Part shown: positions 17,000 to 25,530 of the stretch, in pieces
Layout of the letters: the number at the start of each line of letters is the position of its first letter
How positions within the stretch are numbered: position 1 is the first letter of the stretch
From: Salpingoeca rosetta
Lineage: Eukaryota > Protista > Choanoflagellata
Assembly (NCBI GenBank): GCA_033442325.1
Contig: JAWQFM010000030.1
Coordinates: 508,361 to 552,076, forward strand
Reading direction: 5' to 3'
Length of the DNA: 43,716 bases
Notes under the pieces: generated by a model
What the model was told of the DNA's origin: nothing
What the model saw: the letters and a program-made list of their open reading frames with translations, nothing else
The model's database searches: none
Program-made: the position numbers and the translations under genes

Positions 17000-19900
17000 G
17001 TGCATGCGGTGCAGGTTGATGACGGGCAGTCCGTCTCCATCGTCACCGCTGACGGCATCCACAAACTCGGTAAGATCGTGCGGCGGTGTGTGCACGCATG
17101 ACAACAAGGCATCGCTGTCACCAAGACACACACGCAACTCACACACGCGACTCACTCACTCACACACTCTCACACACTCGCACACACACACACACATACA
17201 CTCACTCACTCACACACACACATACACTCACTCACTCACTCACACACACACACACACTCGCACACACACACACATACACTCACGCTCTTTCTTCGTTGCC
17301 TGCAGGCACGACGTCCCAGCTGGTCACGGACAACATGGTGACGCTGATTGAGGCGTATTGCATCTACAAGGCCGGCCGCGCCGTGGCAGCGGTGGGAGAA
17401 GGTGGTGGTGGAAGGGGAGAACAGGGAGGGGGTGATGTTGTCTGGTATGGTGGATGTTGTTGCGTCCAGACACGCGCTTGCTTGTTTCGTGCATATGTTG
17501 TGTCGGATTGTTTCATTTCATGAACCACCCGATCGTTCTAAGACACGCATCCTTACACACAACACACACAACACACACATACACATACACATCACACACG
17601 TCACCCAGTATGCGGACATCAACGTGCCCTATGGCGCGAACTACGGTGTACTCGAGCGCTCGGATGCGCAGGCCATCCTGATGAAGCATGGTGCCACCGA
17701 CGGGCTGTACCTCATTCGCAAGTCGCCCACCAGCGAACACGACTATGGGCTCTCAGGTCGGTGGTGGTGGTGGTGGTCATAGGTGGTGGTCATTGGGGTG
17801 GTGGCTGGTGGCTGGTGGCTGATGTGTTGTGCATGTTATGTTGACTGGCTGTTGATGGTGGGTGGGTGGTGGTGTAGGTGGTTTGTTTTGGTGGTTGTTG
17901 GTGCCTTGTGCTTCTTCTTCTCACCCATGTACACGTACTTCACGCCTTTTCACGCTTTCGCATGCACCATTGCTTTTTTTTTTTTTTTCCGATGGGCAGT
18001 GTGCAAGGACAAGACCGTGACCCATTTCAAGGTGAAGCTCTTTCCGTCCGGAAAATACGGAATCGGAACAGGACTCCACTTCCTCACCGTTGGCGAGGTG
18101 CCAAGGCGTTTCGTTGTGTTTGTTTGTTTGTTTGTTTGTTTGGTTTGGTTGCTTGTTTGTTTGTTTGTTTGTTTGTTTGTTTGTTTGTGTGTGTGTGTGT
18201 GTGTTGTAATTGTGTTTGTGTGTTGTAATTGTGTTTGTGTGTGTGTGTGTGTGTGTGTGTGTGTGTGTGTGTGTGTGTGTGTGTGTGTGTGTGTGTGTGT
18301 GTGTGTGTGTGTGTGTGTGTGCACTAGCGTCATGCTTTGAGTTGTTGCGAGTGCATGAGCAGCCCTACTTGACCCCTCACAACCAACCCTACCTCCACCT
18401 CCACCTCCCCGCACTCTCATCCTCGCCTCGATGATGCACCAAACAGCTCGACGAGCACTATCACTACTACCGCGATGGTCTTGTGCATGTGCTCACCAAA
18501 AACGTCATCGGGCTTGAGCAGACATACGTGCGTGTGTTGACGGCGGCTGCCGTTGTCATTGTGGCTGTGTGCATGTTGTGCATGTGTGTGTGTGAACAAG
18601 TTGTGCGTATGTGCGTGTGTGCGTGTGTGCGTGTGTGCGTTTGGTATCCACACTTCCCTGCCTGTCGCGTGAATGTGTTGCTCACACCAAAATGTCCGCT
18701 TCGTTTCCTGTGTCTCGTCTCTCCTGCGTCACTCCCTCCCTCTCCCCCCCCCCCTCTCGACCAGGAGTCGAGCACGTACGCGACGGCGACGGCCGACCAG
18801 ACCGCATTCCGCTTGGACGAAATGGTGACGCGCTGTGATGCACACACACACATATGTGCACACACACACACATGTGCACATGCACACACACGCACGTGCA
18901 CACACACACACACACGCACATGCACATCAGCACACGCACGCACACACACGCACATGTGCACACACACACACACGCACATGAGTACATCAGCACACACACA
19001 TGTGCACACATACGCGCACTCACGCATGCACACGCACACGCGTATCACCACACACACCACACGCGCGCTCATGCACACGCACATTCTTTCGTTCACGCTG
19101 CTCTGCATGCCACATGCGTGTGCGTGTATGTGTTCAGCACTACGTTCTTGACGAGAGTTTGGACGACGACCCGCGTCCGCGCAAAACAATCAGAGACATT
19201 GAGGTGAGGAATGATAGATGGTGGTGGTGGTGGTGGTGGTGATGGTAGTGGTGGTGGTGCGTGAGTTGTTATGTTGCTGCTGTGATGTGTGGCTTTGACA
19301 ACCTTGAGGCTTGTAAATGCTGCCCATACCTGCACATAACACGCAGCACAGACGCACATGAACGCACATGAACAAGCACGCGCACACCTTCGCTTCCTCA
19401 TGCGCACGCACGCACACACGCACACGCACACGTCCCGCCTCACCGTTCGCTCGTCCACAGGTGCATCGGTCTGAAATCCGACTTGGAAAGGAACTTGGCT
19501 CCGGCGAGTTTGGAACCGTCCTTGAAGGTTCGTCACGACTTGAGCGAGAGCGTATGAAATGATGGTGTTGCGTGTGATCCTGCATGGTGTATGACACTTT
19601 GGCGCAGTTTTGTTGCTGCTGTTGGCGTGTGTGTTGTCATTTGATATCGGATGCACACTCTCCTTCACATGACACAGCTCACATTACATCATCATCATCC
19701 TCATCATCATCATCATCATCATCATCATCATCATCATCCTCATCATCATCATCATCATCATCATCATCATCATCATCATCATCATCATCATCATCATCAT
19801 CATCATCATCATCATCATCATCATCATCATCAGCTGTGCTCGCCCGTTCCGGCCAGGCCGCCATGACCGTCGCCGTCAAGCAACTCAAGGTCAAATCACA

Positions 19901-22900: not shown

Positions 22901-25530
22901 GAAGTTGCCGTTAAGTTCTTGAAAGTGGACACGTCCGACGAGCAGCAGCAGATGCTGCTGGATGAGGTGCGATCATTGTCGTGGTGGTGTGATGGTTGCA
23001 GTTGTGGTGCTGCTGGTGGTGGTGGTGGGTGTGGTGGTGATGATGGTGGTGGTGATGCGTGTGCGTGTGCGCGTGCGTGGGTGTGCAACCTGCCACATTA
23101 CACACACGCACACACACACACACACATAAATTCACATTCACACACACACACATTCACACACATTCACACACATTCACACACATTCACACACACACACACA
23201 CACACACACACACACACACAACGCCACGGCTCAGGCGAAAGTGATGCACGCACTGCGCCATCCGCATCTCGTGCAGCTGTTTGGCATTTCCGTCGACCAG
23301 CACACATGCATCATCACAGAATACATTCCAATGGGTGCGCAACCCTCCAACCCTGTCTTGTCGCCGCTGCCGATACTCGCATGCTGCAGCTATCGTTGTT
23401 GTTGTTGTTGTTGCTGCTGCTGCTGCTGCTGTTGTTGTTGTTGTTTGTTGAGTTTGGGCGGTTGGAGGGCGTCGTCATCACTGCTTGTTGCCCAACCGCC
23501 ATCTGCCATCTTACGAATCACCTCACACGGTTGCCTCACACCACGCTCCGACCCTCTTGACCCCTCTTGAACCATTGCCACCGCCATTGCCACCGCAGGC
23601 CCGCTGAACAAGTACCTGCAGGCAAACCCGACGATGCCAATCAAGGCGTTGCTCGCATTCTGCCAGCAGGTGTGCAAAGAGAGAGAGAGAGAGAGAGTGT
23701 GTGTGTGTGTGTGTGTGTGTGTGTGTGTGTGTGTGCGTGTGTGTGTGTGTGTGTGAGTGAGTGAGTGAGTGAGTGAGTGAGACAGAGAGTGAGAGAGACA
23801 GAGAGTGAGAGAGACAGAGAGAGTGAGAGAGAGTGAGAGAGAGAGAGTAACAGAGAGTGAGTGAGTGAGTGAGTGAGTGAGAGAGGGAGGGTCTGATTGC
23901 ATGCATGTGCATGATCTTACTTCTTGTGCGTGTTCCCTTACTTTCCATCACACCTCCCCCCCCCTCTCTCTCTTTCTCTCTTTGACCAGATATCGGATGC
24001 AATGGCGTATATGGCGAGCCATAAGTTCGTCCATCGCGATCTCGCAGCGCGCAACGTCCTCGGTAAACACACGCACATGGTGGTGGTGGTGTGATAGGAC
24101 TGACGTGGGCAACGCACGTGCATGTTGTCGTGTATATCCATCTTTTGCGTCTTTCGCTTCTTCCGACACACAAACACAAACACACCAACTCCTACACACA
24201 CATACCCCCCCTCCCACGCACACACACACCACGCACACGCACATTCACACACGCGCGCGCCATCTGTCCAGTTTCGTCCCCGAGCGTGTGTAAGGTTGCA
24301 GACTTTGGGCTGAGTCGTGCCGTTGGCAAAGACAAGGACTACTACCGATCAAAGAACAGGGGCACGTGGCCCATCAAGGTGCGTTGTGACGCATGTATGA
24401 CGTTGTCGTTGTTGGTGGCGTTTGTATATTTCATGTGTGAGAGGTCGTGCTTGCTTTTTTTTTTGCGTTGTTGTGTCGTTGTGTGTGTCTGTATCAATGC
24501 GTGTGTGTGTGTGTGTGTGTGTGTGTGTGTGTCTGTATCAGTGCGTATGTCTGTCTGTCTGTTTGTCTGTCTGCCTGTCAGTCAGTCAGTCTGTCAGTCA
24601 ATCAGTCTGTCTGTCAGTCAGACTGAGTGTGTCCTTGATCACAAATCCAATTGTCCTCTCTCCCCATCAATTGTGTGTGTGTGTGTGCAGTGGTATGCGC
24701 CAGAGAGCCTGTACTATTCTCGCTTCGATTCCAGATCCGACATGTGGTGCGTACGTGAACAGGGAAAGTGTTTGCACACTGGCGTACAAGAGACTGCCGT
24801 TGTTCTTGTCATCGTTGTTGTCGTCGTTGCTGCTGTTGTTGCTTTTGTGAGACGAACCGCTCATGTTCCGTGCATATCTGGTGCACACATGCTCACGTTT
24901 GTGCATCACACCACCACCACCACCACCAATCACTCCTTTTGTCGTGCGCAGGTCCTACGGCGTGACGCTGTGGGAGGTGTTTTCGTACGGGCAGAAGCCG
25001 TACAAAGGTCTCAAGGGCCGCGATGTCATTCTTCTCATCAAGAGGGGCGAACGGCTCGAGAAGCCGGCAGCCGCGCCAGAGGTAATGATTGTGTGTGCGT
25101 CTGTGTGCCTGCGTATTTTCTGTATGTGTGTGTGTGTGTATTTGTGTGTCTGTGTGTGTGTGTGTGTGTATTTGTGTGTTTCTGTATTTGTGTTTGTGTC
25201 TGTGTGTGTGTATTTATGTCTCTGTCTCTGTGTGTCTGTGCCTGCCTGCCTATCTGCCTCTCTGCCTGTCTGCTTGCAACTTTGCCTGTGTAGGTTCCGT
25301 GCATGCACGCATGCATGCTCCTTCCCCTTTCCGAGCACAATGCACACGACACATGAACACACCACCATACCCATCCTCTCAATCACCAACTTACCATCGT
25401 TCCCCTTCTCACACTCCCCTGCCTTCATCAGTGGCTGTACAAGTTGATGCTGTCGTGCTGGGACGTGGATCCAGCGCGCAGGCCCGTGTTCCAGAAAGTG
25501 ACCACCATGCTCAAGCGTGCCATCATTTGA
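17000..25530 (+). CDS. Cytoplasmic tyrosine kinase: end of FERM F3 lobe + SH2 + two tandem Syk/ZAP70-like kinase domains
   Basis: 24 in-phase GT-AG exons: 17000-17069, 17306-17391 ([16 protein letters not shown], cf. FAK AENMADLIDGYCRL); SH2 17609-17756, 18000-18097, 18447-18527 ([43 protein letters not shown]); linker 18765-18824, 19138-19203; kinase 1 19461-19527, 19834-19889, 20251-20379, 20626-20712, 20900-20989, 21212-21343, 21607-21771, 21957-22059 ([37 protein letters not shown]); linker 22408-22481; kinase 2 22736-22966, 23235-23334, 23599-23669, 23990-24062, 24272-24378, 24691-24746, 24952-25081, 25432-25530 ([37 protein letters not shown]), TGA at 25528-25530. Confidence 0.93.
19687..20180. 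repeat. Intronic (CAT)n and (ACTC)n microsatellites flanking the 56-nt VAVK exon
   Basis: (CAT)n 19687-19830 runs directly into the CAG acceptor; (ACTC)n ~19950-20180. Confidence 0.95.

What the first reader, a model, noticed from the sequence alone, without database searches (positions are those of the whole stretch)
19461..25530. Both tandem kinase domains look catalytically intact and Syk/ZAP70-like, with no pseudokinase
Seen: each domain keeps GxGxFG, VAVK, the alphaC Glu (FQREA / LLDEA), [11 protein letters not shown], a tandem activation-loop YY (DYYR) and G[KT][11 protein letters not shown][IL]NKYL and YG.KPY.GLKG. These are Syk/ZAP70/Shark signatures. In animal JAKs the first domain (JH2) has lost the HRD aspartate and the canonical DFG. 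Inference: this may represent the state after kinase duplication but before pseudokinase degeneration, or an independent dual-active kinase.
Basis: partly seen in the sequence, partly recalled or inferred. Interest (0 to 1): 0.8.

Follow-up and report, generated by a model that had tools for sequence, protein, structure and literature searches.

The report
Choanoflagellate kinase with two intact kinase domains
One intron-rich choanoflagellate gene encodes two complete, probably active tyrosine-kinase domains behind FERM and SH2 domains; this family was already published from Monosiga brevicollis, and its tie to the origin of animal JAK kinases is still unresolved.

Summary
Seventeen GT-AG exons from 19461 to the stop at 25528-25530 splice into one 585-aa reading frame. 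It holds two full tyrosine-kinase domains, D1 and D2, 46% identical. Both keep every catalytic motif.

The gene is collinear with single-transcript proteins of at least five other choanoflagellates, ordered FERM-SH2-kinase-kinase. All of them also keep both domains intact.

This family is already published. M. brevicollis 'UTK05mod' was described as FERM, SH2 and dual kinase, with its kinase grouping with Syk rather than JAK. The idea that the JAK pseudokinase arose from such a protein was raised in 2013.

- **Kinase tree:** D1 and D2 fall in a starred clade with Syk, ZAP70, Shark and the active domain (JH1) of sponge JAK-like proteins. Bilaterian JH1 and JH2 lie outside.
- **Shared-duplication trees:** these are disfavoured (likelihood weight 0.01-0.05) but not rejected (p-AU 0.07-0.13).
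- **SH2 tree:** the SH2 groups with JAK SH2 (97/97).
- **Degeneration:** where relatives have lost a domain, it is the second one, the reverse of JAK.

No RNA reads could be laid, so the splicing is inferred. I found no protein of this locus in the databases. The scan noted the same gene on this window before (s1-432376).

The parts
7438..8611 (+). FERM-domain exons of the same gene (only two pieces placed: 7438-7584 and 8522-8611)
   Evidence: tblastn of ortholog P0007 residues 34-84 and 132-161, collinear with the SH2 and kinase hits. The rest of the FERM was not mapped here. Sibling notes s1-432376 and s1-432656 concern it.
17621..18527 (+). SH2 domain, three exons (17621-17756, 18000-18097, 18447-~18527); keeps the pTyr-binding Arg (YLIRKS)
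   Evidence: Pfam SH2 E 1e-5 on the first exon. Junctions chosen against orthologs. In the SH2 tree it is sister to P0007 at 99/89.
19461..22049 (+). Kinase domain 1 (D1), 8 exons: 19461-19527, 19834-19889, 20251-20379, 20626-20712, 20900-20989, 21212-21343, 21607-21771, 21957-22049 (this last end could be 22059)
   Evidence: Pfam PK_Tyr_Ser-Thr on the pieces. All introns are GT-AG. All catalytic motifs are present. It is 55% identical to P0164 D1.
22410..22481 (+). Linker exon between the two kinase domains: [24 protein letters not shown], with two tyrosine motifs
   Evidence: Matches the D1-D2 linker of P0164 (E 0.001) and of P0007, P0165 and P0017. The motif Q-x-hydrophobic-Y-D-hydrophobic is kept in 11 of 14 relatives. 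Phase 0 on both sides; donor GTGAGA.
22736..25530 (+). Kinase domain 2 (D2), 8 exons: 22736-22966, 23235-23334, 23599-23669, 23990-24062, 24272-24378, 24691-24746, 24952-25081, 25432-25530 (stop at 25528-25530)
   Evidence: Pfam. Splice model. Motifs. It is 51% identical to P0162 D2 and lies inside the choanoflagellate D2 clade at 100/95.
   Evidence: They were masked with N in the local BLAST database.

Best explanation
This is one gene of a choanoflagellate-wide family of cytoplasmic tyrosine kinases. The domain order is FERM, one SH2, kinase D1, a tyrosine-bearing linker of about 65 residues, then kinase D2.

What is shown:
- The exons join in frame.
- Both domains carry the full catalytic apparatus and a tandem-tyrosine activation loop.
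- The same holds in five orthologs.
- The D1/D2 duplication is older than the split between craspedid and acanthoecid choanoflagellates.
- Both copies sit in the Syk/Shark/sponge-JAK-JH1 group of kinases.

What is inferred:
- Both domains are active.
- The FERM holds the protein at a membrane or a receptor tail.
- The SH2 binds phosphotyrosine.
- The two kinases phosphorylate each other's YY loops and the linker tyrosines (YQNL, IYDM), which then act as docking or regulatory sites.
- D1 is the indispensable catalytic unit, because it stays intact in every relative. D2 is an auxiliary kinase that several lineages have let decay.

The kinase duplication is most likely separate from the one that gave JAK its JH2 and JH1. 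The FERM-SH2 half probably shares ancestry with JAK.
For: - **Gene model.** One 585-aa frame, 17 GT-AG exons.
- **Orthology.** P0007 (Hartaetosiga balthica, 1130 aa, a complete ORF on one Trinity transcript) is collinear with the window from 7438 to 25117. Its D1 matches the window's D1 best, and its D2 the window's D2. Further full-length orthologs are P0162, P0164 and P0165.
- **Linker.** The linker exon is conserved between D1 and D2.
- **Motifs.** All motifs are kept in 12 of 12 domains of the window and its five orthologs.
- **Kinase tree.** Syk+ZAP70+Shark+cho D1+cho D2+sponge JH1 form a clade at 99/91. The cho D2 clade stands at 100/95. WIN_D1 pairs with P0162_d1 (90/89) and WIN_D2 with P0162_d2 (94/87).
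- **Topology tests.** D1+D2 monophyly costs 10.6 lnL, p-AU 0.46, ELW 0.24. The JAK-type topologies have ELW 0.01-0.05.
- **Degeneration.** It strikes D2 in relatives: HSDLAARH/GYG, HCYLAAHN/NFG, HGCLSARH/SAG.
- **Link to JAK.** SH2 clade with JAK at 97/97. The N-terminal half aligns with sponge JAK-like proteins at E 3e-40 over 385 columns.
- **Expression, weak.** Eight runs of the same organism hold 0.22-0.32 of the words of the whole stretch and 0.19-0.39 of the D2 half. Exons alone would give about 0.20.
- **Literature.** PMC3670263 section 14; PMC4342544 figure 4 legend; PMC4054682 Table S6.
Against: - No RNA read or cDNA of this organism was laid on the locus (searches failed). The junctions, above all 22049/22410/22481/22736, are therefore inferred from orthologs and splice signals.
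- The library type of the partial holders is only guessed.
- Catalytic activity is read from motifs alone.
- The kinase alignment (257 columns) cannot reject any of the JAK-related topologies at 5%. Those constrained searches were stopped before convergence.
- The SH2 clade with JAK rests on 98 columns, and its alternatives are not rejected either (p about 0.10).
- FERM profiles of choanoflagellates, sponge JAK-likes and FAK are about equidistant (scores 113, 99.5 and 121).
- No protein of this locus was found in the databases, and the species is not established.
Confidence: 0.62

Rival explanations
1. Shared duplication with JAK. The tandem kinase arose once, before choanoflagellates and animals split. 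D1 corresponds to JH2 and D2 to JH1. Choanoflagellates keep both active, while animals let the first decay into the pseudokinase.
For: - The domain order is the same, FERM-SH2-kinase-kinase.
- The SH2 groups with JAK SH2 (97/97).
- The N-terminal half aligns collinearly with sponge JAK-like proteins (E 3e-40) and with bilaterian JAK (E 4e-19).
- Sponge JAK-like JH1 is the animal kinase domain most like D1: 47.6% on average, and 51.2% for the window against Sycon.
- The AU test does not reject it: p 0.13 for D1+JH2, 0.11 for D2+JH1, 0.13 for both together.
Against: - The best tree puts JH2 (sponge plus bilaterian, 100/98) outside the clade that holds D1, D2, Syk and Shark.
- The joint constraint costs 32 lnL, with ELW 0.03. 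The strict form has ELW 0.013 and is excluded by RELL and ELW.
- Sponge JH1 is closer to D1 than to D2 (47.6% against 44.2%). Under this reading it should pair with D2.
- Sponge JAK-likes already carry a degenerate first domain.
- In choanoflagellates it is the second domain that decays.
Confidence: 0.12
2. Convergent architecture. A Syk/Shark-type SH2-kinase picked up a FAK-type FERM on its own in the choanoflagellate line, with no special kinship to JAK.
For: - The ortholog FERM profile matches FRMPD4, PYK2 and FAK1 over its full length (E 5e-24 to 2e-20). It matches TYK2 only at 0.003 and JAK1 at 0.35.
- No JAK-specific Pfam family (FERM_F1, FERM_F2, Jak1_Phl, SH2_1) hits the orthologs.
- The best solved match of the SH2 is the SYK N-terminal SH2 (2e-35).
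- This is the view taken in the literature (PMC3670263).
Against: - The SH2 tree joins choanoflagellate and JAK SH2 at 97/97, apart from the Syk/ZAP70 N-SH2.
- The choanoflagellate N-terminal half scores far higher against sponge JAK-likes (297) than against FAK (99.5), although most of the excess comes from the SH2.
- Sponge JAK-like proteins also lack the JAK-specific Pfam families. That absence therefore does not separate the two lines.
Confidence: 0.2
3. One of the two domains is in practice a regulatory, weakly active or inactive domain despite its intact motifs.
For: D2 has a longer branch than D1 (0.62 against 0.38). D2 has decayed in several related proteins, so selection on its catalysis can be relaxed.
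Against: In the window and five orthologs D2 keeps the Gly loop, Lys, Glu, [13 protein letters not shown] and APE. Such conservation across deep splits is hard to explain without catalysis.
Confidence: 0.1
4. Two adjacent genes or transcripts, each with one kinase domain.
For: No transcript of this organism was examined across the 22049-22736 gap.
Against: - The join is in frame through a conserved linker exon.
- Orthologs carry both domains in one complete ORF on one transcript.
- There is no stop in the spliced frame before 25528.
Confidence: 0.03

Closest known systems
Monosiga brevicollis UTK05mod (Suga et al. [quoted passage not shown]
   Same: FERM, SH2 and two kinase domains in that order. 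The kinase domain groups with Syk rather than with JAK. One copy in each of the two sequenced choanoflagellates.
   Different: I could not obtain that sequence, so identity or orthology with this locus is inferred, not shown. P0008 (a UniParc entry) and P0151 (Mylnosiga) belong to the same orthogroup but have a degenerate second domain. Here both domains are intact.
Animal Janus kinases (JAK1-3, TYK2, Hopscotch) and sponge JAK-like proteins (Sycon P0176, Corticium P0179, Oscarella P0023)
   Same: Domain order FERM-SH2-kinase-kinase. The SH2 falls in the same clade (97/97). The N-terminal half aligns collinearly. Sponge JH1 lies in the same kinase clade as D1 and D2.
   Different: In JAK the first kinase-like domain is a pseudokinase (HGN.CAKN, DPG), and already so in sponges (HGGLTAHN, DAG/DVG). 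Here it is intact. Bilaterian JH1 and JH2 lie outside the clade that holds D1 and D2. JAK-specific FERM and SH2 Pfam models do not match the orthologs.
Syk / ZAP-70 and Shark / HTK16
   Same: Nearest named kinase families: 43-47% identity, with the shared P[ILV]KWYAPE loop and YY activation loop. The SH2 resembles the Syk N-terminal SH2.
   Different: Syk and ZAP-70 have two SH2 domains and one kinase. Shark adds ankyrin repeats. Neither has a FERM. D1 and D2 lie outside the Syk+ZAP70 clade (100/99) and the Shark clade (100/100).
Focal adhesion kinase (FAK, PYK2)
   Same: Its FERM is among the best sequence matches to the ortholog FERM (E about 1e-20 over its full length).
   Different: No SH2, a single kinase and a FAT domain. 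Its kinase domain lies outside the Syk/JAK group in the tree.
RSK/MSK kinases (Ser/Thr; from general knowledge, not tested here)
   Same: Two active kinase domains in one chain, where one domain activates the other. This is a working precedent for a dual-active tandem kinase.
   Different: Unrelated kinase groups (AGC and CAMK). The two domains did not arise by tandem duplication.

Membership tests
Choanoflagellate FERM-SH2-kinase-kinase family (UTK05mod type) | Collinear orthology over FERM, SH2, D1, linker and D2 | tested here: met
   P0007 hits run in order from 7438 to 25117. Junctions and the linker exon match the orthologs.
Choanoflagellate FERM-SH2-kinase-kinase family (UTK05mod type) | D1 groups with ortholog D1, and D2 with ortholog D2 | tested here: met
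   WIN_D1 with P0162_d1 at 90/89. WIN_D2 with P0162_d2 at 94/87. D2 clade at 100/95.
Choanoflagellate FERM-SH2-kinase-kinase family (UTK05mod type) | Same protein as, or ortholog of, the published M. brevicollis UTK05mod or S. rosetta PTSG_10626 | not testable with these tools
   Those sequences could not be fetched by name. No self protein was found.
Janus kinase (JAK) | Domain order FERM-SH2-kinase-like-kinase | tested here: met
   Pfam on the orthologs. hhalign against JAK N-terminal halves. Window pieces.
Janus kinase (JAK) | First kinase-like domain is a pseudokinase (no HRD Asp, DPG in place of DFG) | tested here: not met
   D1 has HRDLAARN and DFG. JAK JH2 rows have HGN.CAKN and DPG.
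Janus kinase (JAK) | JAK-type FERM and SH2 (Pfam FERM_F1, FERM_F2, Jak1_Phl, SH2_1) | tested here: not met
   None hit P0007, nor are any on record for P0162, P0164 or P0165. The FERM profile matches FAK at 2e-20 and TYK2 at 0.003. Sponge JAK-likes lack them too.
Janus kinase (JAK) | Kinase domains fall in the JH1 and JH2 clades | tested here: inconclusive
   They do not in the best tree. The constrained trees are worse by 5-34 lnL but p-AU is 0.07-0.13.
Janus kinase (JAK) | SH2 in the JAK SH2 clade | tested here: inconclusive
   Sister to sponge plus bilaterian JAK SH2 at 97/97. The alternatives cost 8.7 lnL, p-AU about 0.10.
Syk / ZAP-70 | Two SH2 domains followed by one kinase domain | tested here: not met
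   One SH2 and two kinase domains.
Syk / ZAP-70 | Kinase domain inside the Syk+ZAP70 clade | tested here: not met
   Syk+ZAP70 at 100/99 excludes D1 and D2. They share only the wider 99/91 clade.
Shark / HTK16 | SH2-ankyrin repeats-SH2-kinase | tested here: not met
   No ankyrin family on the orthologs. The Shark clade at 100/100 excludes them.
Catalytically competent tyrosine kinase (each domain) | Gly loop, beta3 Lys, alphaC Glu, [14 protein letters not shown], alphaF Asp | tested here: met
   All are present in D1 and D2.
Catalytically competent tyrosine kinase (each domain) | Measured phosphotransfer | not testable with these tools
   Needs expression and a kinase assay.

The most novel reading that the evidence does not exclude
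The choanoflagellate FERM-SH2-kinase-kinase family is the sister of animal JAKs, and its two intact kinase domains descend from the same tandem duplication as JH2 and JH1. This gene would then show the JAK ancestor before the first domain became a pseudokinase. The old objection, that 'its kinase groups with Syk', would reflect only how derived bilaterian JH1 is, because sponge JAK-like JH1 also groups with Syk.
Probability: 0.12. Interest if true: 0.8.

Novelty: new member of a known kind. Interest (0 to 1): 0.42.

Why it matters
How JAK acquired its regulatory pseudokinase is an open question, and disease mutations such as JAK2 V617F sit in that domain. A living protein with the JAK domain order and two working kinase domains would allow a direct test of what the first domain did before it lost activity.

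The locus itself is an ordinary member of a family already described from M. brevicollis.

- The family is present across choanoflagellates, with both domains intact in six species.
- Sponge JAK-like proteins link it to JAK through the SH2 and through JH1.
- When a domain decays in choanoflagellates it is the second, the reverse of JAK.

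Tried and rejected
**RNA reads**
No junction in this organism could therefore be checked.

**Search for the locus's own protein**
- Word search with the D2 first exon inside a stop-free frame found nothing in the 215-684 aa range.
- The representative search with exon G gave at most 61% identity.
- The search with P0007 gave orthologs only.

**Naming the organism**
- A 1135-aa ORF at 1196-4603(-) found no homolog.
- P0008 has no gene on record.
- The species stays unproven. 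A sibling note guesses Salpingoeca rosetta.

**Other attempts**
- Manning 2008 (PMC2453073) is not held.
- Single exons against solved structures do not discriminate. Exon G hits many tyrosine-kinase families alike, and the D2 N-lobe exon hits nothing.
- FERM profile scores do not tell JAK from FAK kinship.
- Constrained IQ-TREE searches under LG+F+G4 did not converge in the time allowed. Their best trees so far were used, so the likelihood losses are upper bounds.

**Rejected reading**
- I rejected the view that the proteins I called SH2-kinase-kinase are a separate FERM-less family. P0151 aligns with P0164 from the FERM F3 lobe onward. The others may be 5'-truncated transcripts.

Full report
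**What is in the sequence**

The window is an intron-rich eukaryotic sequence, GC about 0.54, with introns full of CA/GT and similar microsatellites and four runs of N.

On the + strand Pfam recognises an SH2 piece at 17.6 kb. Downstream it finds two successive series of PK_Tyr_Ser-Thr pieces that together cover the model twice.

I chose splice junctions by scoring every GT/GC-AG join against orthologous proteins. The result is 17 exons, all GT-AG, forming one open frame of 585 codons from 19461 to the stop at 25528-25530.

D1 (19461-22049) reads [47 protein letters not shown] and NRPTF. D2 (22736-25530) reads [47 protein letters not shown] and RRPVF.

The two domains are 46% identical.

The KWYAPE loop is shared with Syk, ZAP70, Shark and sponge JAK-like JH1. 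It is not shared with FAK, Eph or bilaterian JH1. A single exon, however, is not family-specific.

**One gene, not two**

Between D1 and D2 lies a 72-base exon at 22410-22481 encoding [24 protein letters not shown]. It joins in phase 0 on both sides.

Its sequence matches the D1-D2 linker of the orthologs. Against P0164 the E-value is 0.001. The core Q-x-hydrophobic-Y-D-hydrophobic is kept in 11 of 14 relatives.

The orthologs are complete ORFs on single assembled transcripts:
- Hartaetosiga balthica P0007, 1130 aa
- Salpingoeca infusionum P0162
- Codosiga hollandica P0165
- P0164, species not given
- Choanoeca perplexa P0163

P0007 is collinear with the window from a FERM exon at 7438 to D2 at 25117. 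Its D1 matches the window's D1 best, and its D2 the window's D2.

I could not lay RNA reads. 

The only evidence from this organism is indirect. Eight runs of unknown library type hold 0.22-0.32 of the sampled words of 19461-25460 and 0.19-0.39 of 23235-25530. Exons alone would give about 0.20. Other runs hold 0.58-0.94.

Places 23145-23192 lie in an intron. A local splice-site script did read the window file across them.

**Already in the literature**

Liongue and Ward 2013 (PMC3670263, section 14), citing Suga et al. [quoted passage not shown] They call it reminiscent of JAK, with a kinase domain that groups with SYK. They add that the JAK pseudokinase might derive from the first kinase domain of such a sequence.

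Suga et al. 2014 say the same in a figure legend.

Fairclough et al. 2013 count one 'Syk/Shark' kinase in S. rosetta (PTSG_10626) and one in M. brevicollis, held in common.

I found no protein of this very locus in the databases. I could not name the species. A sibling note guesses S. rosetta.

**Kinase-domain tree**

The tree has 81 domains and 257 columns, built with IQ-TREE under LG+C20 PMSF.

- One starred clade (99/91) holds Syk, ZAP70, Shark, all choanoflagellate D1 domains, all choanoflagellate D2 domains and the JH1 of the sponge JAK-like proteins.
- The D2 domains form a clade of their own (100/95). It includes acanthoecids as well as craspedids, so the duplication predates crown choanoflagellates.
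- Bilaterian JH1 is the next branch out (92/74).
- JH2 of sponges and bilaterians forms a clade (100/98) further out.
- FAK lies outside all of these.

Both domains are thus Syk-group kinases, as published for UTK05mod.

| Topology held | lnL loss | p-AU | ELW |
|---|---|---|---|
| D1+JH2 (PMSF model) | 5.3 | 0.13 | - |
| D2+JH1 (PMSF model) | 14.1 | 0.11 | - |
| D1+JH2 and D2+JH1 together (LG+F+G4) | 32.3 | 0.13 | 0.03 |
| Strict form of the joint topology | 33.8 | 0.07 | 0.013 |
| D1+D2 monophyly | 10.6 | 0.46 | 0.24 |
| Family plus JAK kinases monophyletic | 19.0 | 0.34 | 0.12 |

The constrained LG+F+G4 searches were stopped early. The kinase domain alone cannot settle the question. It leans against a shared duplication.

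**The other half of the protein leans toward JAK**

A profile of the ortholog N-terminal halves finds SYK and ZAP-70 N-terminal SH2 as the best solved SH2 matches. For the FERM it finds FRMPD4, PYK2 and FAK1. JAK FERMs barely register.

Profile-profile comparison gives a different view:
- Against sponge JAK-like proteins: E 3e-40, 385 columns, FERM through SH2.
- Against bilaterian JAK: E 4e-19.
- Against FAK FERM: E 5e-13.

Most of the excess comes from the SH2. FERM-only scores are about equal among choanoflagellate, sponge JAK-like and FAK.

An SH2 tree (59 domains, 98 columns) joins the choanoflagellate SH2 with sponge and bilaterian JAK SH2 at 97/97. The Syk/ZAP70 N-terminal SH2 is the sister group. 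The alternatives cost 8.7 lnL and are not rejected (p about 0.10).

Sponge JAK-like JH1 is also the animal kinase domain most like D1: 47.6% on average, and 51.2% for the window against Sycon.

My reading is that a common FERM-SH2-kinase ancestor with JAK is about as likely as not, and that a shared kinase duplication is unlikely but open.

**Polarity of decay**

In the window and five orthologs both domains are intact.

In Mylnosiga P0151 and the UniParc entry P0008 the second domain has lost its catalytic residues. These two belong to the same orthogroup, since P0151 aligns with P0164 from the FERM F3 lobe onward. The same loss is seen in several shorter relatives:
- HSDLAARH and GYG
- HCYLAAHN and NFG
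- HGCLSARH and SAG
- DAG, DYG and DFS

Sponge JAK-likes already have a degenerate first domain. The decayed domain is thus the second here and the first in JAK.

**How it most likely works (inference)**

- The FERM places the protein at a membrane or a receptor tail.
- The SH2 keeps the phosphotyrosine-binding arginine (YLIRKS) and binds phosphotyrosine.
- D1 and D2 phosphorylate each other's YY loops and the linker tyrosines.
- D1 is the indispensable kinase, and D2 is an auxiliary one.

None of this is shown.

**Verdict**

The Syk-like, dual-intact reading is supported and already published for a relative. The pre-pseudokinase JAK reading is disfavoured but not excluded.

Noticed in passing
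window 22410-22481: The linker exon carries YQNL and IYDM, ten residues apart. In P0151 and P0008 the same stretch reads YQNI-x6-YDML, which has the form of an ITAM. The second tyrosine is kept in most relatives.
   Followed up: partly
P0008, P0151, P0018, P0036, P0016, P0035, P0017, P0156, P0170 (second kinase domains): In these choanoflagellate relatives the C-terminal kinase domain has lost HRD, DFG or Gly-loop residues while the first stays intact. This is the reverse of JAK.
   Followed up: partly
P0176 (Sycon), P0179 (Corticium), P0023 (Oscarella): Sponge JAK-like proteins already have a degenerate first kinase-like domain (HGGLTAHN, DAG/DVG) that groups with bilaterian JH2 (100/98). The 2013 review placed the pseudokinase at the origin of Bilateria. 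Their JH1 groups with Syk and Shark, not with bilaterian JH1.
   Followed up: partly
window 20712/20900 and 23669/23990: D1 and D2 share one intron at the same place and phase (phase 0, MTQ|IADGMKYL and CQQ|ISDAMAYM). Other introns are near but not at the same codon.
   Followed up: no
P0001 (2911 aa), P0002, P0158, P0159: Proteins from ENA assemblies with 4 to 10 tandem tyrosine-kinase domains topped the representative search. Their organisms are unknown.
   Followed up: no
P0160 (Culicoides brevitarsis 'Shark isoform X2', 1515 aa): This record holds three kinase domains. It may be a gene-model fusion or a real tandem array.
   Followed up: no
window 1196-4603 (-): A stop-free ORF of 1135 codons found no homolog at E 1e-30 in the word search. 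It is probably not one real exon.
   Followed up: partly
window 8611-17600: Only two FERM pieces of the gene were placed (7438-7584, 8522-8611). About 9 kb, including a run of N at 16705-16804, separates them from the SH2. Sibling note s1-432656 suspects a misassembly or nested genes.
   Followed up: no
window 18650-18826: A probable extra exon between the SH2 and D1 (...[25 protein letters not shown]). It would join in phase 0 to 19461. Its acceptor was not fixed.
   Followed up: no
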